Of a stretch of DNA of 64,000 bases, positions 1,660-55,810 are shown piece by piece; position 1 is the first letter of the stretch; the number at the start of each line of letters is the position of its first letter. The position numbers and the translations under genes are program-made. The DNA lies in the NCBI GenBank assembly GCA_965285935.1, contig OZ260666.1, positions 21,452,001 through 21,516,000 on the forward strand. Reading direction: 5' to 3'. This DNA is from Ophelia neglecta. Lineage: Eukaryota. The notes below the pieces were generated by a model, which ran no database searches, was not told the DNA's origin, and was given only the letters and a program-made list of their open reading frames with translations.

Positions 1660-1692
1660 CAAATTAATATTTGCAGGGAAATCATAACAATG
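1660..1692 (+). promoter_or_regulatory. Putative 3' splice acceptor 13 nt upstream of the KLHL ATG (5'-UTR intron); equivalent site before every copy
   Basis: atatttgcag|ggaa-tcataac/aaATG is conserved in copies 1-4 and atatttccag|ggaaatcataacaATG in copy 5, whereas the upstream MNLL ATG is out of frame or absent in copies 2 and 3. Confidence 0.6.
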
Positions 1693-3775
1693 AAGGTAAC
1701 GACGACAGACTACCTGGGGTTCCATGAGAGAATGTCTAGTCTGAGGGAGATGGAGATTGGTCTGGACGGAGTTATCTGTGCCAAGGATGGAGAGGTCAGG
1801 GTCCATCTAACATACATGGCTGCCTGTAACCAGACTCTGTTCAACCGTATTGCTGGTCTCTTGAAACAGAGCAAGAAAGAATTGGCCGTCAAAACCATGT
1901 CGGGGAAAGGTTTACAGCTCATTGTAGATTATTGTTACTCTGGAGAGATCACAGTCTGTGAAGATAACTTTGAACATGTCATCGACGCTGCTCTGGGTCT
2001 GGAATTCCTGGACATAGTGGAGGAGTGTTTAAACTTTGCCTTGAATACAAATGCCAATGCAAATATTTGGTGTCACTTCCTGCGAGCCGCTTTTAAACAT
2101 CCTCGGTCAGTCCAACCAAAGGAATTTGTCCCTAATCTGATTTTGGATAATATTACTAAAGTTCCCAAGGAAGCAGTCATCAAAGGATTGGACGCTGCCT
2201 TCATCGGGGAGATTCTAGAACATGGGACGTTGTCTGAAAATAACAGGTGTTACGCAATGAATGTCTTTCTTGAGGTAATATTAGCAGAAGCAGGAGAAAT
2301 TACTAATTGCAAAAATACTTTCGTTGCAATGCGAGATATGGCGCAACCAGGAGATAAACTCATCATACCAAAAGAAGCCTCTGGTACATCCTTCATAGCA
2401 TTGACAGAGTTGTCACTGGGAATAAATTTTGTTGCCCTTATTAAAGCTTGTGTAGAAGGTTTGGTGAAAACGTCCCCTACAGCTCAAGGTACTTCACTCG
2501 CCTTGAAGTGGACCAAGCAGTATGCTGGGTCTGAGTCTGTGAGCTATCTCAACCAGTTATGTCTACATGCCTTCAAGGATCTGTCTGGACATTTCTGAGG
2601 ATGAACTCTGCCTGATGCTGGACAGTGACTACTTAGGACCAATGTTAGAATTCGATATTTTCAAAAATGTGGTGAAATGGATCAAGCACAATAATACAAG
2701 TGCTAAAACAAACTGTAGAGTAGTCGGTCTGATAAGATTTGGTCTGATGACAAAAGAAGAGATGGACGAAATAATTGTCGAGTATGATTTACCAGGTTGT
2801 GAGGCTATCTATGTATCTGCCATGAGGTGCCATTTAAGGCCTATTGACCAAAGAATAGCTATGGGAAACATAAACAAACTACGACGGAAGCATTCAACCA
2901 TTTACATCATGGGGGGACAGGGTTCAGGAAATAATTATAACAAGAATGTTATCACATCACAGGTTACCCATTTACAACACAACTCGTCCCTGTCTCCTTT
3001 TACCTCGTTGTGTGAAACCCCGTTTGCCCTTAGTAACAGTGCCTGTGCTGAGATGAATGGATTTATTTTTATTTCTGGTGGTGCAAACGAATCAGGTTGT
3101 GTTGCAACGATGTTCCGGCTGGACCCTCGTTCCTACTCATGGCTGGAACTAGAAAAGATGCAACAGAAACGACGCTCCCACACTTTGACATCAATAAACA
3201 CTTCGCTTGTCGCTGTTGGAGGAAAGGACAGAGAAATTAATACTGTGTGTGTAGAGATGTATGATATGACTACAATGAAATGGACATTAGGGGCTCCACT
3301 GCCCGGAGCACGTTGTCGGCATGCTGCGTCTTATGAAGACGGAGTTCTGTACATCAGTGGAGGTAGTCTGTCTAAGACACTGTATAGCTACCATGACAAC
3401 GTTTGGGTTGAAAAGTCTCCAATGTTGCAAGTACGTCAGAGCCATGCCATGACTAGTGTGGTTGGTATGCTGATAGTTGCTGGTGGAGCTGGGTTCGTGG
3501 ATGGTCAATGGAATGATGTGATGTCAACAGAGTGCTATGATATAATACAAGATCAGTGGACGGAACTCTCGTCTCCTAAGTTTGCTTGCGGTGTGGGTTG
3601 CTCAGTCAGGATTAATAACTGGTTTTATTTCCTCGGTGGATGCAGTTATAACGACAAAGTCTGGCTGGACTGTATACAAAGATATAATATTGAGGCCAAT
3701 GAATGGGAAATGTGTGAGAACAGGCTACCACACAGAATGTGTTGTATGGTCGCAGCAAGTATTAATAATAGTTGA
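1690..3775 (+). pseudogene. BTB-BACK-Kelch (KLHL-like) gene copy 1, frameshifted near 2581-2588
   Basis: ORFs 1639-2598 and 2567-3775 together are colinear with the intact paralogues. This copy reads gatctgtctggacatt where copies 2, 4 and 5 read atctgtctctggacatt, i.e. a 2-nt (ct) loss. Could be a real lesion or an assembly error. Confidence 0.85.
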
Positions 3776-8109: not shown

Positions 8110-9310
8110 CCTCAGTCCTGGGGCCTCTCAGCCCAGGGGTCTCTCAGTCCTGGGGTCTCTCAGCCCTGGGGACTCTCCGCCCTGGGGGCTCTCAGCCCTG
8201 TGGTCTCTCGGCCCTGGGGACTCTCAGCCCTGGGGTCTCTTAGCCCTGGGATCTCTCAGCCCTGGGGTCTCTCAGTCCTGGGGTCCCTCAGTCCTGGGAT
8301 CTCTCAGCCTTGGGGTCTCTCAGTCCTGGGGTCTCTCAGTCCTGGGGGCTCTCAGCCCTGGGGTCTCTCAGCCCTGGGGTCTCTTAGCCCTGGGATCTCT
8401 CAGCCCTGGGGTCTCTCAGTCCTGGGGGCTCTCAGCCCTGGGGACTCTCAGCCCTGGGGTCTCTTAGCCCTGGGATCTCTCAGCCCTGGGATCTCTCAGC
8501 CCTGGGGCCTCTCAGCCCTGGAATCTCTCAGCCCTGGGGTCTCTCAGCCCTGGGGTCTCTCAGCCCTGGGGACTCTCCGCCCTGGGGGCTCTCAGCCCTG
8601 GGGACTCTCCGCCCTGGGGGCTCTCAGCCCTGTGGTCTCTCGGCCCTGGGGTCTCTCAGCCCTGGGGTCTCTCAGCCCTGGGGTCTCTCAGCCCTGGGAT
8701 CTCTTAGCACTGGGGTCTCTCAGCCCTGGGGTCTCTCAGCCCTGGGGTCTCTCAGCCCTGGGGTCTCTCAGCCCTGGGATCTGTTAGCACTGGGGTCTCT
8801 CAGGCCTGTGGTCTCTTAGCCCTGGGGGCTCTCAGCCCTGTGGTGTCTCGGCCCTGTGGTCTCTCGGCCCTGGGGTCCTTCAGCCCTGGGGTCTCTTAGT
8901 CCTGGGGTCTGTCAGCCCTGGGGTCTCTTAGCCCTGGGGTCTCTTACCCCTGGGGTCTCTCAGCCCTGGGGTCCCTCAGCCCTGGGGTCTCTCAGTCCTG
9001 GGGTCTCTCAGCCCTGGGGTCTCTCAGCCCTGTTGTCCTTCAGTCCTAAAATCTCTCAGTCCCGGGGGCTCTCAATCCCGGGGGCTCTCAGGCCTGTGGG
9101 TGCTGATCCCGGGGCTATCAATCCTGGGGGTCTGTCATTCCGTGGAGGACTTAGTCTGGTGGCCCTTCTGCCCAAATGTACTTGGTCTTGGGGTCTCTTA
9201 GTCCTGGGGAATTCCTAGTCCGCAGCGGGGGGGGGGGGGGGGGGAGACTCTTAGGTCGTGGACTATCCTCGGTGTCTCCTAGTCCGGGAGCATCTCAGTC
9301 AGGGGAGCTT
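8110..9310 (+). repeat. 16-bp minisatellite (ctctcagccctggggt); homologous arrays 23885-24810 and 35752-36890
   Basis: Directly visible tandem units. Confidence 0.95.
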
Positions 9311-11548: not shown

Positions 11549-12460
11549 ACCGGGGTCTCTCAGTCCCCGGGGGTCTCTCTCGGGGGTTCTGAGTCCCCGG
11601 GGGTCTCTCAGTCCCCGGGGGTCTCTCAATCCGGGGGTCTCTCAGTCCCCGGGGTCTCTCAGTCCCCGGGGGTCTCTCAGTCCCGGGGGTCTCTCACTCC
11701 GGGGGTCTCTTAGTCCCCGGGGGTCTCTCAATCCGGGGGTCTCTCAGTCCCCGGCGTCTCTCAGTCCCCGGGGGTCTCTCAGTCCCCGGGGGTCTCTCAC
11801 TCCGGGGCCTCTCAGTCCCCGGGGTCTCTCAGTCCCCGAGGGTCTCTCAGTCCCCGGGCGTCTCTTAGTCCCCGGGGGTCTCTCAGTCCCCGGGGGTCTC
11901 TCACTCCGGGGGTCTCTCAGTCCCCGGGGGTCTCTCACTCCGGGGGTCTCTCAGTCCCCGGGGGTCTCTCAGTCCCCGGGGGTTCTGAGTCCCCGGGGGT
12001 CTCTCAGTCCCCGTGGGTCTCTAACTCCGGGGGTCTCTCAGTCCCCGGGGTCTCTAACTCCGGGGGTCTCTCAGTCCCCGGGGGTCTCTCAGTCCCCGGG
12101 GGTCTCTCAGTCCCCGGGGTCTCTCAGTCCCCGGGGGTCTCTCAGTCCCAGGGGGTCTCTTAGTCCCCGGGGTGTCTCAGTCCCCGGGGGTCTCTCAGTC
12201 CCCGGGGGTCTCTCAGTCCCCGGGGTCTCTCAGTCCCCGGGGGTCTCTCAGTCCCCGGGGGTCTCTCAGTCCCCGGGGGTGTCTCAGTCCCCGGGGGTCT
12301 CTCAGTCCCCTGGGGTCTCTCAGTCCCCGGGGGTCCCTCAGTCCCCGGGGTCTCTCAGTCTCCGCTGGTTCTGAGTCCGGGGGTCAATCAGTCTTGGGTT
12401 TTCAGTTCGGGGGCCCTCAGTCCGGGTGTCTCTCAGTCCATGGGTCCTTAGTCCGGGGGA
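11549..12460 (+). repeat. 17-18-bp minisatellite (ctctcagtccccgggggt), expanded only in unit 1
   Basis: Directly visible tandem units; no equivalent array at the matching position in units 2 and 3. Confidence 0.95.
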
Positions 12461-14762
12461 AGGGGAGGGGGAGGGGGAGGGTTGGATGGCTGACGCTTTT
12501 CAGCTTCTGAATCCGGAGCTCTTAGTACAGGAAGTGAGGGGGGAGGGGCATGACTCTCGATGCATGGAAGATCCTTGAAATCCAACCCACTTCCCCAATA
12601 AGTATTTACAATTAAGGTTTAAACTACAAAGTATGTGAGCGCGGGATTCCTTTTTAAAAAGTAATTTCTCCAGCGTCTTGTGCTCACCATTCACCGGAAG
12701 GGGGGTCTATATTCCAATGATTGTTTATCAAGGTCACAATGAGGGATATATGGAACAAGATATAGAACAAGACATATTACCTGAAAGGTAGGTAGGGCGG
12801 AGGTAGGGAAGGGGGGGGGGTAGGGGTTGCCGTGCATTAATATACACCATCTGCCATTGACCTGGTTGTATGAGCTTGCATGGTAGCATCATCACTAGAT
12901 TTTAGGATCATCTTAATATAATAAAAATTCAATACCACGTGACTGACCCCCATGCGTTCATATATATACCTCTTTTTCTTCTGAATACATTGGCCATACA
13001 CAGAGAAAACGATATGTAGACTTTAGTTGCTAGCCTATTTAAATCAGAGGAATCAATGGCTTTTATACTAATTCTTTTCTAAGACTCAAGTCTAAGACAA
13101 GAGCTTCCCATACTTCCTCATCTCTATGTTTTTCTACTTAACATTGCAATAAACGCAGCAGTTATAATCCTTGGTTGAAAGGACGATATAATAATATAAA
13201 TTCTCCTATAAGGATGGCGTACGTGCATGCTATCAGCTTAATGTTACCGCTAAAGGTCGGATTCCGAGCAGGACCTCGGCTTTTCCACGAGTCTAGGTTT
13301 TCACTGTCTCGAGATTGGGGAAAACGAAAGCACATGCATTCAAACAAGAGGCGGAAACAGGGAGGGAAGATGTTAGATGGGGTGATGAGGGTCCGGCGGG
13401 ATCGGTCGGGTTGTTATGTGGAGTAAACTATTTTCCCTATCAGGCCTCATAAGGAGGTAAACTTCTGGGCCATTCTGTCTCCATTTGCCCCCCCCCCCCC
13501 CCCGCAACAAATGCCTATATGCTTACAATGACTTTTGCGAGGAAATTGATACAACCACGTCGGGAAATTTTTATCGCTCATTGTTTGCTCCTCCCCCCTC
13601 CCAGCCCCCACCACCTTCCTGGCGTTAAATAATAAAAGTTCCCGAGAACCTCAGTCCGGGGTCCCTCAGTCCGGCCTCAGTCCGGGGTCCCTCAGTCCGG
13701 GAGTCTCTCAGTCCGGTGCTCTCTGAGTCCGGAGGTCTCAGTTCGGGGGTCCCTCAGTCCGGAGGTCTCTCAGTCCAAGAGGTCCCTCAGTCCGGGCTCC
13801 TTCATTCCGGTGGTCCCTCAGTCCGGGGGTCCCTCAGTCCGGGGGTCCCTCAATCCGGGGGTCTCTCAGTCCGGGCGCCTTCAGTCCGGTGGTTCCTCAG
13901 TTCAGCAGGGGTCTCTCAGTCCGGGCGCCTTCATTTCGGTGGTCCCTTAGTTCAGGAGTCTCTCAGTCCGGGTGTCCATCAGTCCGGGGAAAACTCATTT
14001 GGGGCTTTCTCATTCCAAGGAATTGAATAACGGGGGTTTTAAGTCCGGCGTCCCTCAGTCCGAGGGTTCTAATTCACAGTATTTTTAGTCCTTGGGTTTT
14101 CAGTCCGAGGCTCCCTCAGTCAGAGGGTTCTCAGTCCAGGAACTTCTAGTCTGGAGGTTTTCAGAACAGGGGCTCTCAGTCCGAGGGTTCTCAGTCAGGG
14201 GACTCTCAGCCCGGAGGTGTTTGTCCCGGGGGTCCCTCAGTCCGGGCTTCACTCAATTTGGGTTCTCAGTCCGGGGATTCTCAGCCTGGTAATTTTCAGT
14301 CTGCGCGTCCGTAAGTTCGGGTTTCTCCAATCGGGGGGTTCCACATCCTGGGGGTCCCTCAGTCACCAGGGTTCAGTCTTTACGTACCATATGGACTAAA
14401 ATAATCGGCAGGCGTTTATCAATTAAGGGGAGCTAAAAGCGTCTATTTTAGACCAGATTTCATTTTGGACACAGCGTTTATTATAGACCGATTTTGATAA
14501 TCTCACAATCCAGTCAACTATTATTGATCCGGCGCGTGTTATAGTTCGGCTTTTACTAAAGGCCATATTTGTCTCCATTTCACAATATGTAGATCTCGTG
14601 GCCTATAGGTGGGGAGTTGACTCCAAACAGTAATTTTTCATATGATAAAAGTACACCCGGTGATAGAATCAGGGTTTTGGTTCCTATTGGCGGCAAAGCA
14701 AAGTGATGTGAAATTATGAACTTATTATAGATCAAATTAATATTTGCAGGGAATTCATAACA

Positions 14763-16850
14763 ATGAAGGTTACGACGACAGACTACCTGGGGTTCCACGA
14801 GAGAATGTCTCGTCTGAGGGAGATGGAGATCGGTCTGGACGGAGTTATCTGTGCCAAGGATGGAGAAGTCAGGGTCCATCTACCATACATGGCCGCCTGT
14901 AACCAGACTCTGTTCAACCGTATTACTGGTCTCTTGAAACAGGACAAGAAAGAATTGGCTGTCAAAACCATGTCGGGTAAAGGTTTACAGCTCATTGTAG
15001 ATTATTGTTACTCTGGTGAGATTACGATCTCGGAAGATAACTTTGAGCACATCATTGACGCTGCTCTGGGTCTGGAATTCCTGGACATAGTGGAGGAGTG
15101 TTTAAACTTTGCCTTGAATACAGATGCTAATGCAAATATTTGGTGTCACTTCCTGCGAGCTGCTTTTAAACATCCTCGGTTAGTCCAACCAAAGGAATTT
15201 GTTCCTAATCTGATTTTGGATAATATTACTAAAGTTCCCAAGGAAGCAATCATTAAAGGATTGGACGCTGCCTTCATCGGGGAGATTCTAGAACATGGGA
15301 CATTGTCCGACAATAACAGGTGTTACGCAATGAATGTCTTTCTTGAGGTTATATTAGCAGAGACAGGTGAAATTACAAATTACAAAAATACTTTCGTTGC
15401 AATGCGAGATATTGCGCAACCAGGAGATGAACTGATCGTACCAAAAGAAGCCACTGGGACATCCATCATAGCATTGACAGAGTTGTCACTGGGAATAAAT
15501 TTTGTTGGCCTTATTAAAGCTTGTGTAGAAGGTTTGGTGAAAACATCCCCTACAGCTCAAGGTACTTCACTCGCCTTGAAGTGGGCCAAGCAGTATGCTG
15601 CGTCTGAGTCTGTGACGTATCTCAACCAGTTATGTCTACATGCCTTCAATAATCTGTCTCTGGACATTTCTGAGGATGAACTCTGCCTGATGCTGGACAG
15701 TGACTATTTAGGAACAATATCAGAAATGGATATTTTCAAAACTGTGGTGAAATGGATCAAACAAAACAACACAAGTGCTGAAACAAACCGTAGAATAGTC
15801 GGTCTGATCAGATTTGGGCTGATGACGAAAGAAGAAATGGAAGAAGTAATATTAGAGCACACTTTACAAGGTTGTGGGGATATATATGTATCTGCCATGA
15901 AGTACCATTTAAGGCCAAATGACCCACGACTAGCTGAGGGAAACATTAACAAACTACGACTGAAGAATTCAACCATTTACATCATGGGGGGGAAAGATTC
16001 ATTTAATAATTATATAAACAAAGTTGTGGCGTCAGAGGTTACACATTTAAAAGGCAACGTATCCCTGTCACATTTTACTGACGTCTGTGAAACCCCGTTT
16101 GCCATTTACAAAAGTGCTTGTGCTACTATGGATGGACTTATATTTGTTTCTGGTGGTGAAAACGAATCTGGCTGTGTTGCAACGATGTTCCGGCTTGACT
16201 CGCGTTCAAACGCATGGTTGGAACTACAAGACATGCGACAGATACGACATTCCCACACTTTGACAACTGTTGATGATTCCCTTTTCGCTGTTGGTGGATC
16301 GGTCGACAAAACCCATTTAGTCTGTGTGGAGAAATATGACGTGCGAAAAAACAAATGGTCACCTATGGCGCCACTGCCACGAGCACGAAGTCAGCATGCT
16401 GCGTCTTATGAAGACGGAGTTCTGTACATCAGTGGAGGTAGTCATTCTAAGACACTGTATAGCTACCATGACAGCGTTTGGATTGAAAAGTCTCCAATGT
16501 TACAAGTACGTCAGACACATGCCATGACTAGTGTGGTGGGTATGCTGATAGTTTCTAGTGGAGCTGTGTTCGTGGATGGTCAATGGAATGATGTGATGTC
16601 AACAGAGTGCTATGATATAATACAAGATCAATGGACGGAACTCTCGCCTCCTAAGTTTGCTTGCGGTTTGGGTTGCTCAGTCAGGATTAATAACTGGTTT
16701 TATATCATCGGGGGTTTTAGTCAAAATGACAAAGTCAGGCTGGATTGTATACAAAGATATAACATCGAGGCCAATGAATGGGAAATGTGTGAGAACAGGC
16801 TACCACACAAAATGTGTTTTATGGTCGCAGCATGTATTAATAATAGTTGA
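14763..16850 (+). CDS. BTB-BACK-Kelch (KLHL-like) protein copy 2, 695 aa, intronless CDS
   Basis: BTB motifs (VHLPYMAAC..LF; LQLIVDYCYSGEI; IDAALGLEF..VEEC), BACK motifs (LCLMLDSDYL..E.DIFK.VVKWI; IRFGLM) and six Kelch repeats (GG..Y/F..W). Confidence 0.95.
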   Translation: MKVTTTDYLGFHERMSRLREMEIGLDGVICAKDGEVRVHLPYMAACNQTLFNRITGLLKQDKKELAVKTMSGKGLQLIVDYCYSGEITISEDNFEHIIDAALGLEFLDIVEECLNFALNTDANANIWCHFLRAAFKHPRLVQPKEFVPNLILDNITKVPKEAIIKGLDAAFIGEILEHGTLSDNNRCYAMNVFLEVILAETGEITNYKNTFVAMRDIAQPGDELIVPKEATGTSIIALTELSLGINFVGLIKACVEGLVKTSPTAQGTSLALKWAKQYAASESVTYLNQLCLHAFNNLSLDISEDELCLMLDSDYLGTISEMDIFKTVVKWIKQNNTSAETNRRIVGLIRFGLMTKEEMEEVILEHTLQGCGDIYVSAMKYHLRPNDPRLAEGNINKLRLKNSTIYIMGGKDSFNNYINKVVASEVTHLKGNVSLSHFTDVCETPFAIYKSACATMDGLIFVSGGENESGCVATMFRLDSRSNAWLELQDMRQIRHSHTLTTVDDSLFAVGGSVDKTHLVCVEKYDVRKNKWSPMAPLPRARSQHAASYEDGVLYISGGSHSKTLYSYHDSVWIEKSPMLQVRQTHAMTSVVGMLIVSSGAVFVDGQWNDVMSTECYDIIQDQWTELSPPKFACGLGCSVRINNWFYIIGGFSQNDKVRLDCIQRYNIEANEWEMCENRLPHKMCFMVAACINNS

Positions 16851-17544
16851 CGTATTATAGAAATATCCTGAACACTATGTGCAAGAATGCAACTATAAGT
16901 TCAAATCCAGTTTATTTACTATGAAATGCGATTAAGTCTGCTCGATGTACATAAGATAAGGTTGAATTATTTATTCAGGTGAAAAATTATTTCCAGGTAT
17001 TTTGTACATAAACCCATGTTGTTAATAACACAGACGGCATTGTGGTCTGTCTTGGAGAGCCGGGATGGTGATTCGATTTAAATATTTGTTTTGCATTTCT
17101 TCAGTCAATAACATAGGTTTTTGTTTAAGATTTAAGTTTAATTAATAAACGTGGGCAAAAGAGTTATCTGTACTTGTAATTTACTGATTTTTAGTTTCCA
17201 AACTTCGAGATCTTCACATGCTATTTTTCCTAGTAATAGACTCAACTGGTGACATTCATCGATGCCTTAGTATATTGTTTATTCATATAACTTGCACTTT
17301 TATATGTACTCAATTATCTTGATAATTTCATTAAAGCTTGATATTAATACATTTTGATTTTGCAGTAGATATTGTCATACTTAAAGAAATACTTGCGTTT
17401 TTCGATATTTGTACATCAACATATATAGTCATGATAACAGTTTTTAGCTTTATACATTCGATTTCCATGATATTTAATCTTCAAAAACTTCTTTGACTAT
17501 ATTGGATGACAATTTGGAAGACTATTCCCCAATAGTATATTATT

Positions 17545-18535
17545 TCCGTCACTTACTTGAGTACAGTATGCGTTTTGCGCCAATCATTTTCGGAAAAATG
17601 GGGGGGATATGCATTCGGCCTCGAGGTTGTCCTGTAGTCCCCACGCCGCCCCACATCCCCCCGCCTCGCCAACGCCCCGCCGCCCCCGCCGACCCCGCCA
17701 CCCACCGGATTAATTTGTTTTTGCTGTAATTAAGCAAAGCCTGAACGCCCTGAAACGGGCTGGGGAATTTTTCGGGAATACTGTTCATAAACTACTACTG
17801 CCGAAGTTACGAACTGTATTTCACCAGTTACACGTTTTAGAAAAAAAAGTATGATAGATATGGCGCCGAAATTGGCAGGGAAGAAGCGCCTATGCCTGGC
17901 CATTCACTGATTTACCCTGGGGTGAAATAGGAAATAGTTAATGACTTGCCAACGGATTTAGAAAATGAAAGTCAAGCTTCTTTAATACGGCAGTAAGGCC
18001 TATATTTACTCTGGGAAGGGTTTGTCATATTTGACATTGACCCACATTTTAAGGTCAAATTGATAAAATCATAATTTCAGACTTTATTTTAGCAGTAGTA
18101 CCTAGAGGTACATTGGACACCTATAAAGAACAAAATTATTCGCATTTTATCGCGTTCTCTTGTTTACTTTGGGGTTCATTTTCACGGTCCATTTACCAAA
18201 GTGATGGTATTCAGCCTTTATGTCCGCAGTTAGAGTCTAGAAGTATATTGAGAACTTATAGGAAGCGACATTTTTCGAATATTATCGAGTTCTCAGATTT
18301 GAACTTAGGTTTCATTAACAATGTCAAATTACAGACAATGATGATTACAGCCTTTATTTTAGCAGTTAGAGTATAAAAGTATGTTGGGAACCTATAGGAA
18401 ACACACTTTCGCATCTTCGCGAGTTCTCCGCTTTGATCTTGGCGTCCATTTCCAAGGTCAAATTACCGGAATGATGATTTCCGCCATTTTCTTAGCAGCA
18501 AAAGTCTAGCACTACATTGAGAACCTATACATTAA
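17545..18535. repeat. Interspersed-repeat-like block with GC-rich head and ~135-bp degenerate internal tandem units; also ~30845-31830 and ~43525-44435
   Basis: (tta/cc)gcagt..tctag..gaacctata and tgacc..aaggtcaa motifs recur near 18088, 18226, 18359 and 18492. Confidence 0.55.
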
Positions 18536-28056: not shown

Positions 28057-30141
28057 ATGAAGGTAACGACGACAGACTACCTGGAGTTCCACGAGAGAAT
28101 GTCTCGTCTGAGGGAGATGGAGATTGGTCTGGACGGAGTTATCTGTGCCAAGGATGGAGAAGTCAGGGTCCATCTACCATACATGGCTGCCTGTAACCAG
28201 ACTCTGTTCAACCGTATTACTGGTCTCTTGAAACAGAACAAGAAAGAACTGAACGTCAAAACCATGTCGGGTAAAGGTTTACAACTCATTGTAGATTATT
28301 GTTACTCTGGTGAGATCACAGTGTGTGAAGATAACTTTGAACACGTCATTGATGCCGCTCTGGGTCTGGAGTTCCTGGAGATAGTGCAGGAGTGTTTAAA
28401 CTTTGCCTTGAATACAGATGCCAATGCAAACATTTGGTGTCACTTCCTTCGAGCAGCTTTTAAACATCCTCGGTCTGTTCAACCAAAGGAATATGTCCCT
28501 AATTTGATTTTAGATAATATTACTAAAGTTCCCAAGGAAGCAATCATCAAAGGATTGGACGCCGCCTTCATCGGGGAGATTCTAGAACATGGGACATTGT
28601 CTGCAAATAACAGGTGTTACGCAATGAATGTCTTTCTTGAGGTAATATTAGCAGTAACCGTTGAAATTACAAATTACAAAAATACTTTCTGTCGCATGCG
28701 AGATATTGCGCAACCAGGAAATGAACTGATCATACCAAAAGAAGCCACTGGTACATCCATCATAACATTGACAGAGTTGTCACTGGAAATAAATTTTGTT
28801 GGCCTTATTAAAGCTTGTGTAGAAGGTTTGGTGAAAACATCCCCTACAGCTCAAGGTACTTCACTCGCCTTGAAGTGGACCAAGCAGTATGCTGGGTCTG
28901 AGTCTGTGACGTATCTCAACCAGTTATGTCTACATGCCTTCAAGGATCTGTCCTTGGACATTTCTGAGGATGAACTCTGCCTGATGCTGGACAGTGACTA
29001 CTTAGGACCAATGTCAGAATATGATATTTTCAAAAATGTGGTGAAATGGATCAAACACAATAATACAAGTGCTGAAACTGACTGTAGATTAGTCGGTCTG
29101 GTAAGATTTGGTCTGATGACGAAAGAAGAAATGGACGAAGTAATTGTCGAGTATGATTTACCAGGTTGTGAATCCATCTATGTATCTGCCATGAGATACC
29201 ATTTAAGGCCTGTTGACCAAAGAATAGCTATGGGAAACATAAACAAACTACGACGGAAGCGTTCAACCATTTTCATCATTGGGGGACTGGATTCAGGAAA
29301 TAATTATAACAAGAATGTTATCACGTCACAGGTTACCCATTTACAACACAACTCGTCCCTGTCTCATTTTACCTCGGTGTGTGAAACCCCGTTTGCCCTT
29401 ATGAACAGTGCATGTGCTGAGATGAATGGATTTATTTTTATTTCTGGCGGTGAAAACGAATCTGGTTGTGTTGAAACGATGTTCCGGCTGGACCCTCGTT
29501 CCCACTCATGGCTGGAACTAGAAAAGATGCAACAGAAACGGCGCTTACACACTTTGACATCAATAAACACTTCGCTTGTCGCTGTTGGAGGATGGAACCG
29601 AGAAATTGATATTGTGTGTGTAGAGATGTATGATATGACTACAATGAAATGGACACTAGGGGCCCCACTGTTGAGAGCACGTTGTCAGCATGCTGCGTCT
29701 TATGAAGACGGAGTTCTGTACATCAGTGGAGGTAGTCATTCTAAGACACTGTATAGCTACCATGACAACGTTTGGGTTGAAAAGTCTCCAATGTTGCAAG
29801 TACGTCAGATCCATGCCATGACTAGTGTGGAGGGTATGCTGATAGTTGCTGGTGGAGCTGTGTTCGTGGATGATAAATGGAATGACGTGATGTCAACAGA
29901 GTGTTATGATATAATACAAGATCAGTGGACGGAACTCTCGTCTCCTAAGTTTGCTTGCGTTATGGGTTGCTCAGTCAGGATTAATAACTGGTTTTATATC
30001 ATCGGTGGATGCAGTTATAACGACAATGCCAGGCTAGACTGTATACAAAGATATAATATTGAGGCCAATGAATGGGAAATGTGTGAGAACAGGCTACCAC
30101 ACAAAATTTGTTCTATGGTCGCATGTATGAATAATAATTGA
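28057..30141 (+). CDS. BTB-BACK-Kelch (KLHL-like) protein copy 3, 694 aa
   Basis: Uninterrupted ORF colinear with copy 2, same motifs. Confidence 0.95.
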   Translation: MKVTTTDYLEFHERMSRLREMEIGLDGVICAKDGEVRVHLPYMAACNQTLFNRITGLLKQNKKELNVKTMSGKGLQLIVDYCYSGEITVCEDNFEHVIDAALGLEFLEIVQECLNFALNTDANANIWCHFLRAAFKHPRSVQPKEYVPNLILDNITKVPKEAIIKGLDAAFIGEILEHGTLSANNRCYAMNVFLEVILAVTVEITNYKNTFCRMRDIAQPGNELIIPKEATGTSIITLTELSLEINFVGLIKACVEGLVKTSPTAQGTSLALKWTKQYAGSESVTYLNQLCLHAFKDLSLDISEDELCLMLDSDYLGPMSEYDIFKNVVKWIKHNNTSAETDCRLVGLVRFGLMTKEEMDEVIVEYDLPGCESIYVSAMRYHLRPVDQRIAMGNINKLRRKRSTIFIIGGLDSGNNYNKNVITSQVTHLQHNSSLSHFTSVCETPFALMNSACAEMNGFIFISGGENESGCVETMFRLDPRSHSWLELEKMQQKRRLHTLTSINTSLVAVGGWNREIDIVCVEMYDMTTMKWTLGAPLLRARCQHAASYEDGVLYISGGSHSKTLYSYHDNVWVEKSPMLQVRQIHAMTSVEGMLIVAGGAVFVDDKWNDVMSTECYDIIQDQWTELSSPKFACVMGCSVRINNWFYIIGGCSYNDNARLDCIQRYNIEANEWEMCENRLPHKICSMVACMNNN

Positions 30142-40737: not shown

Positions 40738-42825
40738 ATGAAGGTAACGACGACAGACTACCTGGGGTTCCATGAGAGAATGTCTCATCTTAGGGAGATG
40801 GAGATCGGTCTGGACGGAGTTATCTGTGCCAAGGATGGAGAGTTCAGGGTCCATCTGCCATACATGGCTGCCTGTAACCAGACTCTGTTCAAGCGTATTA
40901 CTGGTCTCTTGAAACAGAACAAGAAGGAACTGGCCGTCAAAACCATGTCGGGTAAAGGTTTACAGCTCATTGTAGATTATTGTTACTCTGGAGAGATCAC
41001 AGTCTGTGAAGATAACTTTGAACACGTCATCGACGCTGCTCTGGGTCTGGAATTCCTGGACATAGTGCAAGAGTGTTTAAACTTTGCCTTGAATACAAAT
41101 GCCAATCCAAATATTTGGTGTCACTTCCTGCGAGCAGCTTTTAAACATCCTCGGTCAGTCCAACCAAAGGAATTTGTTCCTAATCTGATTTTGGATAATA
41201 TTACTAAAGTTCCCAAGGAAGCCATCATCAAAGGATTGGATGCTGCCTTCATCGGGGAGATTCTAGAACATGGGACATTGTCTGACAATAACAGATGTTA
41301 CGCAATGAATGTCTTTCTTGAGGTAATATTAACAGAGACAGGTGAAATTACAAATTACAATAATTCTTTCGTTGCAATGCGAGATATTGCGCAACCAGGA
41401 GATAAACTGATCATACCAAAAGAAGCCACTGGTACATCCATCATAACATTGACAGAGTTGTCACTGGAAATAAATTTTGTTGGCCTTATTAAAGCTTGTG
41501 TAGAAGGTTTGGTGAAAACGTCCCCTACATCTGACGTTACTTCACACGCATTGAAGTGGGCCAAGCAGTATGCTGGGTCTGAGTCTGTGAGCTATCTCAA
41601 CCAGTTATGTCTACATGCCTTCAAGGATCTGTCTCTGGACATTTCTGAGGATGAACTCTGCCTGATGCTGGACAGTGACTACTTAGGACCAATGTTAGAA
41701 TTCGATATTTTCAAAAATGTGGTGAAATGGATCAAACACAACAATACAAGTGCTGAAACAAACCATAGAGTAGTCGGTCTGATAAGATTTGGTCTGTTAA
41801 CAAAAGAAGAGATGGACGAAGTAATTGTCGAGTATGATTTACCAGGTTGTGAGGCTATCTATGTATCTGCCATGAGATACCATTTAAGGCCTATTGACCA
41901 AAGAATAGCTATGGGAAACATAAACAAACTACGACGGAAGCAGTCAACCATTTTCATCATTGGGGGACTGGATTCAGGATCTAATTATAACAAGAATGTT
42001 ATCACATCACAGGTTACCCATTTACAAGACAATACGTCCCTGTCTCCTTTAACCTCGGTGTCTGAAACCCCGTTTGCCCTTAAGAATAGTGCATGTGCTG
42101 AGATGAATGGATTTATTTTTATTTCTGGTGGTGAAAACGAATCAGGTTGTGTTGCAACGATGTTCCGGCTGGACCCTCGTTCGCATTCATGGCTGGAACT
42201 AGAAAAGATGCAACAGAAACGACGCTCTCACACATTGACATCAATAAACACTTCGCTTGTCGCTGTTGGAGGAAGGAAAGGAGAAATTAGTACTGTGTGT
42301 GTAGAGATATATGATATAACTTCAATGAAATGGACACTAGCGGCGCCAATGCCACAAGCACAAGCTCAGCATGCTGCGTCTTATGAAGACGGAGTCCTGT
42401 ACATCAGTGGAGGTAGTCAGTCTAAGACACTGTATATCTACCATGACAACGTTTGGATTGAAAAGTCTCCAATGTTACAAGTACGTCAGGGCCATGCCAT
42501 GACTAGTGTAGTTGGAATGCTGATAGTTGTTGGTGGAGCTGTGTTCCTGGATGGTAAATGTAAAGATGTGATGTCAACAGAGTGCTATGATATAATCCAA
42601 GATCAGTGGACGGAACTCTCGCCTCCTAAGTTTGCTTGCGGTTTGGGTTGCTCAGTCAGGATTAATAACTGGTTTTATATCATCGGTGGATGCAGTTATA
42701 ACGACAATGCCAGGCTGGACTGTATACAAAGATATAACATTGAGGCCGATGAGTGGGAAATGTGTGAGAACAGGCTACCACACAAAATGTGTTGTATGGT
42801 TGCAGCATGTATTAATAATAGTTGA
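40738..42825 (+). CDS. BTB-BACK-Kelch (KLHL-like) protein copy 4, 695 aa from MKVTT
   Basis: ORF 40687-42825; start placed at the MKVTT ATG shared by all five copies. Confidence 0.95.
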   Translation: MKVTTTDYLGFHERMSHLREMEIGLDGVICAKDGEFRVHLPYMAACNQTLFKRITGLLKQNKKELAVKTMSGKGLQLIVDYCYSGEITVCEDNFEHVIDAALGLEFLDIVQECLNFALNTNANPNIWCHFLRAAFKHPRSVQPKEFVPNLILDNITKVPKEAIIKGLDAAFIGEILEHGTLSDNNRCYAMNVFLEVILTETGEITNYNNSFVAMRDIAQPGDKLIIPKEATGTSIITLTELSLEINFVGLIKACVEGLVKTSPTSDVTSHALKWAKQYAGSESVSYLNQLCLHAFKDLSLDISEDELCLMLDSDYLGPMLEFDIFKNVVKWIKHNNTSAETNHRVVGLIRFGLLTKEEMDEVIVEYDLPGCEAIYVSAMRYHLRPIDQRIAMGNINKLRRKQSTIFIIGGLDSGSNYNKNVITSQVTHLQDNTSLSPLTSVSETPFALKNSACAEMNGFIFISGGENESGCVATMFRLDPRSHSWLELEKMQQKRRSHTLTSINTSLVAVGGRKGEISTVCVEIYDITSMKWTLAAPMPQAQAQHAASYEDGVLYISGGSQSKTLYIYHDNVWIEKSPMLQVRQGHAMTSVVGMLIVVGGAVFLDGKCKDVMSTECYDIIQDQWTELSPPKFACGLGCSVRINNWFYIIGGCSYNDNARLDCIQRYNIEADEWEMCENRLPHKMCCMVAACINNS

Positions 42826-52469: not shown

Positions 52470-53000
52470 CAGTCCGGGGGTTCTCAGCCTGGGGGTCTCT
52501 CAGCCCGGGCGTCTCTCAGCCCTGGGGTCCCTCAGCCCTGGGGTCTCTCAGCCCTGGGGTCTCTCAGCCCTGGGGTCCCTCATCCCTGGGGTCTCTCAGC
52601 CCGGGCGTCTCTCAGCCCGGGCGTCTCTCAGCCCGGGCGTCTCTCAGCCTGCTACTTTTCGGTCTGCGGGTCCGACAGTCCGGGTTTCTACATCCGGGGG
52701 TTCCTCGTCTTGGGGATCTCTCAGTTAGAGGTTCGGGTATAGATTCCCGGATCCCGGACTGAGAGGGGTCTTCGGAATGAGGGACCACGGAGTGAAAGAC
52801 CCCTGACTAAGGGATCCCAACCCGAGAGTCCCGGACTGAGGGAACCCGGAATGAGAGGCGTCCGGACTCAAGGAACCCAGGAGTGAGAACCCACCGAATT
52901 AAGGGACTCCCGACTGAGAAGCCTGGACTCAGGGGCTCCCTGAGGTGGAACCCACAGACTGGGGGTTCCACTGAGAATCCCCAGACTACTGAGGGTCCCA
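52470..53000. repeat. Minisatellite array present in both orientations (foldback arrangement)
   Basis: ctctcagccc/cagtccgg units at 52470-52725, then reverse-complement ccggactgag units at 52753-53000. Confidence 0.8.
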
Positions 53001-53728
53001 TTGAACGAAAAATTCTAGTTGGTTGGTCGCCTGTTCTGTCGGACTACTATAGACAAAGCCTCAGGAGTCTGTCCGATGTGTTTTCAGTCCGAGGACTCAC
53101 AGTGCAACAGCCTCTGAATCTATGCCCAGGGTTTCTCGGGTCATGGTACTCTCTGTTTGGAGACGCTCAGTCAGGGGGGGGGGGGTGCTCAAAATCCGGG
53201 TGTCTTTTTTTGTCTTGGGGTTCATCAGTAATGCGTGGGTTCGTCAGTCTGGAGGGCTCTTGAACAATGGAGCTTAGACAAGGGCGCAGGGGGGAGGGGG
53301 AGGAGGAGGTGGAGGGGGGGGGGGCTTCAGCGTTCAGTTCTTACATACCGTATGCACTAAAATAATCGGCGAGCGTTTAGAAATAACGGGGAGCTAATAG
53401 AACCGGCGCTTATTTTAGGCCGGATTTCATTATAGACAAGGTGTTTATTATAGACAGATTTTGTTAAGCTCACAATCCAGTCAATTATTATTGATCCGGC
53501 GCGTATTATAGCTCGGCTTTTATTAAAGCCCGTATTTATCTCCAATTTAGCTCTACAATATGTAGCTCTCGTGGCCTATAGGTGGGGAGTTGACTTCGAA
53601 CTGTAATTTTTACATGGTAAAAGTACACCCGGTGATAGAATCAAATATTGGTTCCTATTGGCGGCAAAACAATTGTGATGAACTTACTCAATGTAGATCA
53701 AATTAATATTTCCAGGGAAATCATAACA

Positions 53729-55810
53729 ATGAAGGTTACAACAACAGACTACCTGGGGTTCCACGAGAGAATGTCTCGTCTGAGGGAGATGGAGATCGGT
53801 CTGGACGGAGTTATCTGTGCCAAGGATGGAGAGGTCAGGGTCCATCTACCATACATGGCTGCCTGTAACCAGACTCTGTTTAACCGTATTACTGGTCTCT
53901 TGAAACAGAACAAGAAAGACCTGGCCGTCAAAACCATGTCGGGTAAAGGTTTACAGCTCATTGTAGATTATTGTTACTCTGGAGAGATCACAGTCTGTGA
54001 AGATAACTTTGAACACGTCATCGACGCTGCTCTGGGTCTGGAGTTCCTGGACATAGTGCAAGAGTGTTTAAACTTTGCCTTGAATACAGATGCTAATGGA
54101 AATATTTGGTGTCACTTCCTGCGAGCTGCTTTTAAACATGCTCGGTTAGTTCAACCGAAGGAATTTGTCCCTAATCTGATTTTGGATAATATTACTAAAG
54201 TTCCCAAGGAAGCAATCATCAAAGGATTGGACGCCGCCTTCATCGGGGAGATTCTAGAACATGGGACATTGTCTGAAAATAACAGGTGTTGCGCAATGAA
54301 TGTCTTTCTTGAGGTAATATTAGCAGAGACACGGGAAATTACAAATTACAAAAATACTTTCGTTGCAATGCGAGATATTGCGCAACCAGGAGATAAACTG
54401 ATCATACCAAAAGAAGCTACTGGAACATCCATCATAGCATTGACAGAGTTGTCACTGGAAATAAATTTTGTTGGCCTTATTAAAGCTTGTGTAGAAGGTT
54501 TGGTGAAAACATCCCCTACAGCTCAAGGTACTTCACTCGCCTTGAAGTGGGCCAAGCAGTATGCTGGGTCTCAGTCTATGAGCTATCTCAACCAGTTATG
54601 TCTACATGCCTTCAAGGATCTGTCTCTGGACATTTCTGAGGATGAACTCTGCCTGATGCTGGACAGTGACTACTTAGGACCAATGTCAGAATATGATATT
54701 TTCAAAAAAGTGATGAATTGGATAGAACACAACAATACAAGTGCTGACACAAACTGTAGAGTAGTCGGTCTTATACGATTTGGTCTGATGACGAAAGAAG
54801 AAATGGAAGAAGTTATTGGCGATTACGATTTTCCTGGTTGTGAGGCTATTTATTTTTCTGCCATGAGGTACCATGTAAGGGCTTATGAGCAGCCGTTAAC
54901 TAGGGGAAACATTAACAAACTACGGCTGAAGAATTCAAAGATTTACATCATGGGCGGAAAGGATTTAACAAATAACTATAACAAGAAAGTTATCACGTCC
55001 GAGGTTACCCAAGGCAACGCATCTTTGTCTCCTTTTACTGATGTGTGTGAATCCCCGTTCGTCGTTTACAAAACTGCTTGTGCTGAGATGAATGGATTTA
55101 TATTTGTTTCTGGTGGGCAAAACGAATCTGGCTGTGTTGCAGCGATGTTTCGGCTTGACTCTCGTTCAAACGCATGGCTGGAACTACAAGACATGCGACA
55201 GAAACGACGTTCCCACACTTTAACATCAATTGATGCCTCCCTTGTCGCTGTTGGAGGTTGGGACGCTGAATGTCAAATTGCCTGTGTGGAGACGTATGAT
55301 GTTAGAGAACAGAAATGGACACTAGTGGCGCCATTGCCAAGAGCACGATCTCAGCATGCTGCGTCTTATGAAGACGGAGTTCTGTACATCAGTGGAGGTA
55401 GTCAGTCCAAGACACTGTATAGCTTCTGTGACAATGTTTGGAATGAAAAGTCTCCAATGTTGCAAGTACGTCAGAGCCATGCCATGACTAGTGTGGTTGG
55501 TATGCTGATAGTGGTTGGTGGAATAGTGTCATTGGAGAGTAAATGGAAAGATGTCATGTCAGCAGAGTGTTATGATATAATACAAGATCAGTGGACGGAA
55601 CTATCGCCTCCTAAGTTTGCTTGCGATTTGGGTTGCTCTGTCAGGATTAATAACTGGTTTTATATCATCGGAGGTTATAGTCAAAACGACAAAACCTGGT
55701 TTGACTGTATACAAAGATATGACGTCGAGGCCGATGAGTGGGAAATGTGTAATTTGAAACTTCCGCATAAAATGAGTAGAATGGTCACAGCATATATTTA
55801 TAATGTTTGA
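53729..55810 (+). CDS. BTB-BACK-Kelch (KLHL-like) protein copy 5, 693 aa from MKVTT, most divergent 3' end
   Basis: ORF 53648-55810. C-terminus (CNLKLPHKMSRMVTAYIYNV) and 3' flank diverge from copies 1-4. Confidence 0.95.
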   Translation: MKVTTTDYLGFHERMSRLREMEIGLDGVICAKDGEVRVHLPYMAACNQTLFNRITGLLKQNKKDLAVKTMSGKGLQLIVDYCYSGEITVCEDNFEHVIDAALGLEFLDIVQECLNFALNTDANGNIWCHFLRAAFKHARLVQPKEFVPNLILDNITKVPKEAIIKGLDAAFIGEILEHGTLSENNRCCAMNVFLEVILAETREITNYKNTFVAMRDIAQPGDKLIIPKEATGTSIIALTELSLEINFVGLIKACVEGLVKTSPTAQGTSLALKWAKQYAGSQSMSYLNQLCLHAFKDLSLDISEDELCLMLDSDYLGPMSEYDIFKKVMNWIEHNNTSADTNCRVVGLIRFGLMTKEEMEEVIGDYDFPGCEAIYFSAMRYHVRAYEQPLTRGNINKLRLKNSKIYIMGGKDLTNNYNKKVITSEVTQGNASLSPFTDVCESPFVVYKTACAEMNGFIFVSGGQNESGCVAAMFRLDSRSNAWLELQDMRQKRRSHTLTSIDASLVAVGGWDAECQIACVETYDVREQKWTLVAPLPRARSQHAASYEDGVLYISGGSQSKTLYSFCDNVWNEKSPMLQVRQSHAMTSVVGMLIVVGGIVSLESKWKDVMSAECYDIIQDQWTELSPPKFACDLGCSVRINNWFYIIGGYSQNDKTWFDCIQRYDVEADEWEMCNLKLPHKMSRMVTAYIYNV

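What the first reader, a model, noticed from the sequence alone, without database searches (positions are those of the whole stretch)
15700..16390. Patchwork gene conversion shuffles propeller segments between paralogues; copy 2 is a chimera
Seen: copies 2 and 5 share a blade 1-2 type (RLKNS, GGKD, SEVT, FTDVCE, YK, FVSGG, LDSRSNAWLELQDMRQ) distinct from 1/3/4 (RRK.S, SQVT, LDPRS.SWLELEKMQQ), yet copy 2's C-terminus and 3' flank group with 1/3/4. Other blocks pair differently: GPMLEF (1,4) vs GPMSEY (3,5); IFIIGGLDSG and NDNARLD (3,4); GSQSK, IVVGG, KDVMS, EADEW (4,5); WTKQY, VWVEK, SSPK (1,3). The block catgctgcgtcttatgaagacggagt.ctgtacatcagtggaggtagtc is nearly identical in all five. Inference: recurrent conversion or unequal crossover recombines blades and creates new specificities.
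Basis: partly seen in the sequence, partly recalled or inferred. Interest (0 to 1): 0.75.

Follow-up and report, generated by a model that had tools for sequence, protein, structure and literature searches.

The report
Mosaic BTB-Kelch gene array
Five neighbouring genes for BTB-Kelch proteins, part of a family of about thirty copies on one chromosome, have swapped pieces with each other over evolutionary time, so that copy 2 carries one half of its binding domain from one lineage and the other half from another; this is a familiar way for gene families to diversify, seen here in an unfamiliar family.

Summary
Of 47 sites that split copies 1/3/4 from 2/5, 39 lie in CDS nt 1080-1604.

The five copies belong to a family of 30: 22 in this array and 8 in two clusters about 1.3-1.6 Mb away. 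The scan met this family before on other DNA (s1-741950).

One tree does not fit the gene:
- Segment trees conflict, with AU p from 4e-9 to 1e-50.
- PHI z is -22.7, against 0.3±1.0 in 40 single-tree simulations.

Copy 2 is a chimera. Blades 1-3 are sister to a copy 60 kb upstream (L002). Blades 4-6 and the 3' flank group with copies 1, 3 and 4. The junction lies at the near-invariant 49-nt block.

Corrections: copies 2 and 5 are not one type, being 20.6% apart and in different clades. Conversion and crossover cannot be separated. New specificities and somatic shuffling are untested. Only short contigs were available, so long reads could not confirm the chimera.

Verdict: germline recombination between paralogues, a known process in a new family.

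The parts
1690..3775 (+). Copy 1 (A12), a BTB-BACK-Kelch coding region broken by a 2-nt deletion between window 2583 and 2584. It has S2 type III and S3 type X.
14763..16850 (+). Copy 2 (A13, L001), an intact 695-aa BTB-BACK-Kelch gene and the chimera. It is the only S2 type I unit in a run of type III/X units.
15508..16389 (+). Tract of copy 2 (CDS nt 746-1627: end of the helical region plus blades 1-3) that is closest to L002, 60 kb upstream. It shows 0-3 mismatches per 100 nt over nt 700-1200 and none in nt 1512-1627. Small mismatch clusters lie at nt 1222-1243, 1416-1419 and 1440-1511. The 5' limit is not resolved.
15663..15716 (+). Low-diversity island (CDS nt ~901-954) at the first major breakpoint.
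16395..16443 (+). Near-invariant 49-nt block encoding the first two strands of blade 4 (aa 545-560). It lies at the second major breakpoint. The same block is at 3320-3368, 29689-29737, 42370-42418 and 55355-55403.
16390..18350 (+). Blades 4-6 and 3' flank of copy 2, of the type shared with copies 1, 3 and 4 (S3 clade X, flank group F1).
28057..30141 (+). Copy 3 (A14, L012), intact, types III/X.
40738..42825 (+). Copy 4 (A15, L013), intact, types III/X. Its open frame starts at 40687.
53729..55810 (+). Copy 5 (A16, L017), intact, types II/Y. Its relatives L020, L021 and L023 lie outside the window.
52564..53865 (+). Upstream region and first ~137 nt of copy 5. It is almost identical (2 mismatches in ~1300 nt) to the same part of L021, 82 kb downstream, whose coding body matches L020 instead.

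Best explanation
The five genes are members of a ~30-copy, lineage-specific family. Each has a single coding exon and encodes a BTB-BACK-Kelch protein with the fold of a Cul3 substrate adaptor. Its germline history includes repeated homologous recombination between non-allelic copies, by interlocus gene conversion, unequal crossover, or both.

Shown:
- The coding region behaves as three linkage blocks: nt 1 to ~900 (BTB plus most of the helical region), ~950-1630 (end of the helical region plus blades 1-3), and ~1680-2088 (blades 4-6, linked to the 3' flank).
- The blocks meet at two islands of low diversity.
- Block types are reassorted among copies.
- Copy 2 joins blades 1-3 of the L002 lineage to blades 4-6 and a 3' flank of the lineage of its neighbours, copies 3 and 4.

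Inferred:
- The 5' block is kept similar by more frequent exchange. Its mean dS is 0.16, against 0.35 for the middle block.
- The propeller blocks keep old, divergent types.
- Reassortment adds to the variety of the binding face, which varies most at a few loop positions.
For: Family and fold:
- There are 30 copies, 20 intact.
- Pfam finds BTB, BACK and Kelch domains above their cut-offs.
- The model's mean pLDDT is 79.9. It matches the KLHL22 and KBTBD2 Cul3 complexes over its full length. Its propeller matches KLHL3, KLHL2 and KEAP1 Kelch domains at TM 0.80-0.84, normalised to the target.

Incongruence between segments:
- Copy 2 and L002 are sisters in S2, with support 100/99.
- In S3, copy 2 falls in clade X (99/96) and L002 in clade Y (100/98).
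- AU tests: S3 rejects {copy 2, L002} at p 1e-50; S2 rejects clade X at 3e-43; S3 rejects S2 clade I at 4e-9.

Tests for recombination:
- PHI for the family is 0.531 against 0.640±0.0045, with 0 of 500 permutations as low.
- PHI z is -22.7, against 0.31±1.0 (range -2.1 to 2.3) in 40 alignments simulated on one tree with three rate partitions.
- An unguided breakpoint scan gains +788 lnL at nt ~908 and +632 at nt ~1688. The AIC penalty is 132 per extra tree.
- S2 types recombine with S3 types: type I occurs with W, X, Y and Z; type III with X, Y and Z. S3 type matches 3' flank group in 29 of 30 copies.

Synonymous sites, which argue against convergence:
- Mean dS is 0.160 (S1), 0.347 (S2) and 0.234 (S3).
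- Copy 2 against L002 has pS 0.133, 0.064 and 0.218 across the three parts. Copy 2 against copy 3 has 0.195, 0.262 and 0.147.
- 15 of the 39 clustered 134|25 sites are synonymous.

A recent event: L021 joins copy-5-type upstream DNA to an L020-type gene and downstream DNA, at about 99.7-99.8% identity on each side.
Against: - No long reads were available. The three runs come from one sample and are kept as contigs of about 100-250 nt, which cannot bridge a junction.
- The copying-model painting over-segments. It gives 288 segments in the real data but 196±15 with no recombination, so only about a third are in excess.
- My run-length test has a weak null and too few permutations for multiple testing.
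- Clades for the AU tests were named after the trees were seen.
- The gains in the breakpoint scan include rate differences as well as topology.
- The 5' limit of copy 2's L002-like tract is unresolved: S1 cannot reject {copy 2, L002} (p 0.455).
- In S3, sister copies show no excess of shared states (0.73 against 0.78 simulated).
- Expression and function are unknown.
Confidence: 0.85

Rival explanations
1. Assembly artefact. The mosaics are chimeric consensus sequences or misplaced haplotype copies, created when a tandem array of similar units was assembled.
For: - No long-read check was possible.
- A 100-N gap lies within 10 kb downstream of L021, the copy with the most recent-looking chimera.
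- There are 8 frame-breaking indels, several in short repeats, which could be consensus errors.
- L020 and L021 are almost identical (10 mismatches in 3.4 kb).
Against: - Units differ by 6-25%, while the junction block is only ~50-75 nt long.
- Copy 2's L002-like tract is not identical to L002: 38 differences in S2.
- Mosaicism affects the whole family, and block type is tied to flank type.
- Synonymous divergence changes stepwise across the junctions.
- Short contigs at 97% identity or more cover copy 2's own middle block and 3' flank.
Confidence: 0.05
2. One duplication tree with no exchange. Blades 1-3 simply evolve faster, and shared motifs arise by convergent selection on the binding face.
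For: - The middle block is the most variable, and loop positions vary most.
- Two codons show a nominal excess of amino-acid changes.
Against: - AU tests reject shared topologies.
- Single-tree simulations with region-specific rates give PHI z 0.31±1.0, against -22.7 observed.
- Synonymous sites carry the same splits.
- Non-coding 3' flanks sort with blades 4-6.
Confidence: 0.03
3. Programmed or somatic diversification. Copies and broken copies serve as donors for targeted conversion in particular cells, as with immunoglobulin pseudogene conversion in birds.
For: Circumstantial only:
- 10 of 30 copies are broken yet share tracts with intact ones.
- Conserved islands flank the variable blocks.
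- Two solo fragments cover only the middle block.
Against: - Nothing here bears on somatic tissue.
- Tracts have diverged since exchange, as expected of old germline events.
- The solo fragments are degenerate, at 60% and 45% identity with 4 and 7 stops.
- Germline recombination explains everything seen.
Confidence: 0.02

Closest known systems
KLHL / KBTBD proteins (BTB-BACK-Kelch substrate adaptors of Cullin-3 ligases, e.g. KLHL22, KBTBD2, KLHL3, KEAP1)
   Same: Same domain order and fold. Pfam finds BTB, BACK and six Kelch repeats. Sequence hits include KLHL17, KLHL20, KLHL22 and KEAP1. The model matches KLHL22 and KBTBD2 Cul3 complexes over its full length and matches Kelch domains at TM 0.80-0.84.
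   Different: - The nearest public protein is only 37% identical.
- The helical region is long (aa 121-385).
- The coding region is a single exon.
- There are about 30 tandem copies rather than single conserved genes.
- Cul3 binding was not tested.
Plant NLR resistance-gene clusters with sequence exchange between paralogues (e.g. coffee SH3 cluster, PMC3113787; RPP8 family, PMC6771003; for both I saw only the search listing and the start of the abstract)
   Same: Tandem families in which gene conversion and unequal crossover make chimeric paralogues, while the recognition domain stays diverse.
   Different: A different protein class (ubiquitin-ligase adaptor rather than NLR) and an animal genome. 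Population data and phenotypes are lacking here.
Podospora anserina hnwd family (PMC2873952; abstract read)
   Same: Paralogues with a beta-propeller recognition domain whose repeats are exchanged within and between family members.
   Different: There the repeat units themselves are nearly identical and are shuffled, gained and lost at high rates. Here the blades are not interchangeable, blade number is fixed at six, and exchange is between homologous positions of different genes.
GOT1 paralogues of Tigriopus californicus (PMC3728101; abstract read)
   Same: Gene conversion gives a mosaic of low-divergence and high-divergence regions. Rare transfer of divergent regions makes new combinations.
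   Different: That case is two-copy enzyme genes, not a 30-copy array with a binding domain.
MATH-BTB adaptor expansions in nematodes and grasses (recalled: Thomas 2006; listing and abstract start of PMC4091423 seen)
   Same: Lineage-specific expansion of Cul3 adaptors with a conserved BTB and a variable substrate-binding domain.
   Different: The binding domain is MATH rather than Kelch. I did not check whether exchange between paralogues has been described there.

Membership tests
BTB-BACK-Kelch (KLHL/KBTBD) Cul3 adaptors | N-terminal BTB domain | tested here: met
   PF00651 scores 34.2 bits (cut-off 20.5) at aa 17-118 of copy 2, and 32.8 bits in copy 5. Sequence match to the KLHL3 BTB.
BTB-BACK-Kelch (KLHL/KBTBD) Cul3 adaptors | BACK domain between BTB and Kelch | tested here: met
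   PF07707 scores 39.2 bits (cut-off 20.9) at aa 274-362. The model is all-helical over aa 121-385.
BTB-BACK-Kelch (KLHL/KBTBD) Cul3 adaptors | Six-bladed Kelch beta-propeller | tested here: met
   Kelch_1 scores 110.8 bits. The model has six four-strand blades over aa 403-680. TM is 0.80-0.84 to KLHL3, KLHL2 and KEAP1 Kelch domains.
BTB-BACK-Kelch (KLHL/KBTBD) Cul3 adaptors | Binds Cullin-3 and delivers substrates for ubiquitination | not testable with these tools
   I did no contact-residue analysis, and no binding data exist. The full-length fold match to Cul3-bound KLHL22 and KBTBD2 is only suggestive.
Multigene family shaped by interlocus gene conversion / unequal crossover | Adjacent segments support conflicting trees | tested here: met
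   AU p 4e-9 to 1e-50; two breakpoints, +788 and +632 lnL.
Multigene family shaped by interlocus gene conversion / unequal crossover | Nearby sites are more compatible than distant ones, beyond what rate variation gives | tested here: met
   PHI: 0 of 500 and 0 of 1000 permutations as low. z is -22.7 against 0.31±1.0 in 40 single-tree simulations.
Multigene family shaped by interlocus gene conversion / unequal crossover | Conversion proper: a tract bounded on both sides by less similar sequence, with the donor unchanged | tested here: inconclusive
   Copy 2 against L002 has pS 0.133, 0.064 and 0.218 across the three parts. The 3' limit is sharp at nt 1627/1628. The 5' limit is blurred (AU p 0.455 in S1). 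Upstream DNA is 88-90% identical to L002's. Reciprocity cannot be judged from one genome.
Multigene family shaped by interlocus gene conversion / unequal crossover | Mosaics present in raw long reads, not only in the assembly | tested here: inconclusive
   Only short contigs of three runs from one sample were available. They cover the stretch but bridge no junction.
Recognition repertoire under diversifying selection | Excess of amino-acid over silent change at binding-face sites | tested here: inconclusive
   A crude parsimony count found 2 of 688 codons (543 and 635) at nominal p<0.05, uncorrected. Every structural class has dN/dS below 1 (0.39-0.85), highest in the loops between blades and after the GG motif. 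All 30-codon windows are below 1.
Somatic gene-conversion diversification (bird immunoglobulin type) | New mosaics in somatic cells that are absent from the germline | not testable with these tools
   No tissue-resolved reads were available.

The most novel reading that the evidence does not exclude
The array is a germline 'cassette' repertoire of intracellular ubiquitin-ligase adaptors. Conserved nucleotide islands between variable half-propellers are themselves maintained as exchange points. Blades 1-3 and blades 4-6 are therefore reassorted often enough, perhaps still within populations, to act as a combinatorial recognition system. Broken copies and solo fragments would serve as a reservoir of variants.
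Probability: 0.12. Interest if true: 0.8.

Novelty: new member of a known kind. Interest (0 to 1): 0.45.

Why it matters
Exchange between tandem paralogues is a standard route to diversity in recognition families such as plant NLRs, MHC and fungal hnwd genes. Finding it in a large BTB-Kelch array that is private to this lineage suggests the animal may use Cul3-type adaptors as a variable binding repertoire. The result also gives two practical leads: a map of which blocks move together and where the junctions lie, and a caution that gene trees, dating and selection tests for this family must be done block by block.

Tried and rejected
- **The repeat finder on the whole window.** The output was swamped by a 16-nt minisatellite. 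I used BLAST and MAFFT in scripts instead.
- **Flank BLAST upstream of the genes.** The same minisatellite inflated the totals. I replaced this with a 700-nt proximal alignment and 10-kb collinear BLAST.
- **Run-length (GENECONV-like) test.**
  - 434 of 435 pairs were tested; one was dropped for fewer than 10 differences.
  - 51 pairs had 0 of 2000 permutations reaching the observed run.
  - The null ignores rate variation, and 2000 permutations cannot reach a Bonferroni threshold. I use it only as illustration.
- **Copying-model painting.** The null gives 196±15 segments against 288 real. Individual short segments are therefore not trusted.
- **Parsimony count of selection.** Only 2 codons reached nominal significance. 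It does not confirm strong diversifying selection.
- **Reads.** No long reads and no RNA runs were available. The long-read test and any expression test were not possible.
- **The search for homologous proteins.** It returned only 2 hits. The exhaustive search shows the nearest full-length relatives at 37% and 35% identity.
- **Literature.** None of these five searches listed a paper on recombination within animal BTB-Kelch arrays. That is all I can say about what is in print. Supplementary files were not consulted.
- **Failed scripts.** (missing key; thread setting; log pattern). Each was corrected and rerun.
- **First report hand-in.** It was turned back for a schema slip: the confidence field was misplaced. 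I corrected it and sent it again.
- **Rejected readings.** Convergence on one tree; copies 2 and 5 as one lineage; the solo middle-block fragments as active donors (they are degenerate).
Full report
**What is in the window**

The window holds five co-oriented open frames of about 695 aa, spaced 12.7-13.3 kb apart.
- Copy 1 is at 1690-3775. It is split by a 2-nt deletion.
- Copy 2 is at 14763-16850.
- Copy 3 is at 28057-30141.
- Copy 4 is at 40738-42825.
- Copy 5 is at 53729-55810.

Pfam finds BTB, BACK and Kelch repeats above their cut-offs. A model built from 21 aligned sequences has mean pLDDT 79.9. It shows a BTB domain (aa 1-120), a long helical region (121-385) and six blades (403-680). 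The model matches Cul3-bound KLHL22 and KBTBD2 over its full length. Its propeller matches KLHL3, KLHL2 and KEAP1 Kelch domains at TM 0.80-0.84 (sequence hits). Pairwise CDS identity among the five copies is 87.5-93.9%.

Every listed motif pairs the copies as stated. The 49-nt block occurs exactly five times, identical in four copies and with one change in copy 4.

Among 448 variable columns, 115 are informative. The 1,3,4 | 2,5 split has 47 sites, and 39 of them lie in CDS nt 1080-1604. Fifteen of those 39 are synonymous. In that segment:
- copies 1, 3 and 4 differ from one another by 6-7%;
- copy 2 differs from them by 24-26%;
- copy 5 differs from them by 21.5-23%;
- copies 2 and 5 differ from each other by 20.6%.

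Splitting the three distances for copies 1, 2 and 5 by my own arithmetic gives branches of about 12.7%, 11.8% and 8.9%. These are three deep types, not two.

In the last 484 nt, copy 2 is 7-8% from copies 1/3/4 and copy 5 is 14-15% from all the others. Copy 2's 3' flank aligns with copies 3 and 4 over 1500 nt, and with copy 5 only weakly.

**The family is much larger than the window**

A six-frame search of the genome finds 22 copies in this array (C9: 21.32-21.59 Mb). It finds four inverted copies at 22.79-22.82 Mb and four more at 23.05-23.09 Mb, plus fragments and a 52%-identical outlier on another contig.

Of the 30 family members, 20 are intact and 10 are broken. The nearest public protein among 1.84 billion representatives is 37% identical. 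The scan had already met this family in the 22.8-Mb cluster (note s1-741950).

**Does one tree fit?**

I cut the 30-copy alignment into S1 (nt 1-940), S2 (941-1604) and S3 (1605-2088). These boundaries were chosen.
- In S2, copy 2 is sister to L002 (support 100/99) inside an 11-copy clade I. Copy 5 sits with L020, L021 and L023 (100/99, type II). Copies 1, 3 and 4 lie in a long-branched 12-copy clade III.
- In S3, copy 2 joins copies 1, 3 and 4 in clade X (99/96). L002 and copy 5 fall in clade Y (100/98).

The AU tests give the following. The clades were named after the trees were seen.
- S3 rejects {copy 2, L002} at p 1e-50.
- S2 rejects clade X at p 3e-43.
- S3 rejects clade I at p 4e-9.
- S2 rejects {copy 2, copy 5} at p 3e-71.
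- S1 cannot reject {copy 2, L002} (p 0.455).

A breakpoint scan that knows nothing of my boundaries puts the best break at nt ~816-953 (+788 lnL). The next is at ~1643-1688 (+632 lnL). The AIC penalty is 132 per extra tree. The gains include rate differences as well as topology.

PHI is far below its permutation range, with 0 of 500 permutations as low for the family and 0 of 1000 for the five copies. As a control, I simulated 40 alignments on one tree with three rate partitions. They gave PHI z 0.31±1.0, against -22.7 for the real data.

**Not convergence**

Mean synonymous divergence is 0.160 in S1, 0.347 in S2 and 0.234 in S3. For copy 2 against L002, pS runs 0.133, 0.064 and 0.218 across aa 1-233, 234-542 and 543-695. 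For copy 2 against copy 3 it runs 0.195, 0.262 and 0.147. Non-coding flanks tell the same story: S3 clade and 3' flank group agree in 29 of 30 copies, while S2 and S3 types are reassorted.

**Anatomy of copy 2**
- Against L002, copy 2 has 0-3 mismatches per 100 nt over nt 700-1200, and none in nt 1512-1627.
- From nt 1628 it has 13-25 mismatches per 100 nt. Its 3' flank is unalignable with L002's.
- Against copy 3, the pattern is the reverse.
- The switch lies at codon 543, just before the 49-nt block. That block encodes the first two strands of blade 4.
- The block is a low-diversity island. Its third-position diversity is 0.072, against 0.215 in S2 and 0.160 in S3. A second island lies at nt 901-954.
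- Short-read contigs branch at both edges of the block, at window 16367 and 16442. This fits a stretch shared among paralogues.
- In array order, copy 2 is the only type I middle block in a run of type III units.
- Its upstream 4.5 kb is closer to L002's (88-90%, contiguous) than to copy 3's (80-85%, fragmented).

A crossover between an L002-like unit and a copy-3-like unit, followed by later exchange, fits as well as a bounded conversion tract. I cannot separate the two.

**Fine patches**

Mismatches between copy 2 and L002 cluster at nt 1222-1243, 1416-1419 and 1440-1511. Painting assigns these stretches to other copies. However, painting yields 196±15 segments even without recombination, against 288 observed.

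A more direct test looked at sister pairs. At 73% of the S2 sites where sisters differ, both states also occur in other copies, against 51±4% in the simulations. The excess is slight in S1 (0.62 against 0.54) and absent in S3 (0.73 against 0.78). Short-tract exchange in blades 1-3 is therefore likely but not firmly shown.

**A recent event**
- L021, 82 kb downstream of copy 5, has upstream DNA collinear with copy 5's over 10 kb. There are 2 mismatches in the ~1300 nt nearest the start codon.
- Its coding region and 8 kb downstream match L020 instead, with 10 mismatches in 3.4 kb.
- L020's upstream DNA is unrelated to either.
- An assembly gap of 100 N lies within 10 kb downstream of L021, so this case needs read support before it is trusted.

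**Selection and specificity**

Variation is highest in the loops after the GG motif and between blades. One residue just before the first strand of each blade is hypervariable: aa 449, 497, 543, 585 and 635. The 20 intact copies carry 19 different residue sets at nine such positions.

My crude count finds only 2 of 688 codons with a nominal excess of amino-acid change. All structural classes and all 30-codon windows have dN/dS below 1. Copy 2 and L002 differ at five of six left-half positions despite sharing the tract. Local change therefore matters at least as much as reassortment. 'New specificities' remains inference.

**Artefact check**

The only runs that hold the stretch come from one sample and are kept as short contigs. 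They cover the region at 97% identity or more, but none bridges a junction. The argument against an artefact is indirect:
- tracts have diverged from their nearest relatives;
- the pattern is family-wide;
- it extends to flanks and to silent sites.

**Verdict**

This is germline recombination between paralogues in a lineage-specific BTB-Kelch array. Copy 2 is a well-supported chimera. The process is well known; the family is new. The closest comparators are plant NLR clusters (listing only), the Podospora hnwd family (abstract) and the Tigriopus GOT1 paralogues (abstract).

Noticed in passing
window 1-909, 8111-9101, 11552-12393, 13649-13989, 23888-24773, 27155-27376: A GC-rich 16-nt minisatellite (period 16, also read as 47 or 63) recurs several times in every 13-kb unit, including 0.7-1.1 kb upstream of each gene. 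Whether it promotes misalignment of units was not tested.
   Followed up: partly
L021 (C9:21586250-21591325) with L031 and L033; window 52564-53865: L021 is a very recent-looking chimera: copy-5-type upstream DNA joined to an L020-type gene and downstream DNA. A 100-N assembly gap lies within 10 kb downstream of it.
   Followed up: partly
G000:C9:21399797-21400384 (inside L035) and G000:C9:21346613-21347191: Two degenerate solo fragments cover only aa ~328-527, the middle block. They have 4 and 7 stops and are 60% and 45% identical to copy 2. They share the same limits and lie 53 kb apart.
   Followed up: partly
window 2583/2584 (copy 1) and loci L004, L009, L022, L024-L028, L030: 10 of 30 copies are broken. 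Eight carry frame-breaking indels of 1, 2 or 7 nt, several in short repeats. L009 and L022 carry in-frame stops but no frame-breaking indel. Real decay and consensus error cannot be told apart here.
   Followed up: partly
copy 2 aa 449, 497, 543, 585, 635 (window 16107-16109, 16251-16253, 16389-16391, 16515-16517, 16665-16667): There is one hypervariable residue at the same place in each of blades 2-6, just before the first strand. Up to 11 different residues occur among 19 copies.
   Followed up: partly
window 1639, 40687, 53648 versus 14763, 28057: Copies 1, 4 and 5 have an open 17-codon extension (MNLL...) before the shared MKV start. Copies 2 and 3 do not. Neither point was tested.
   Followed up: no
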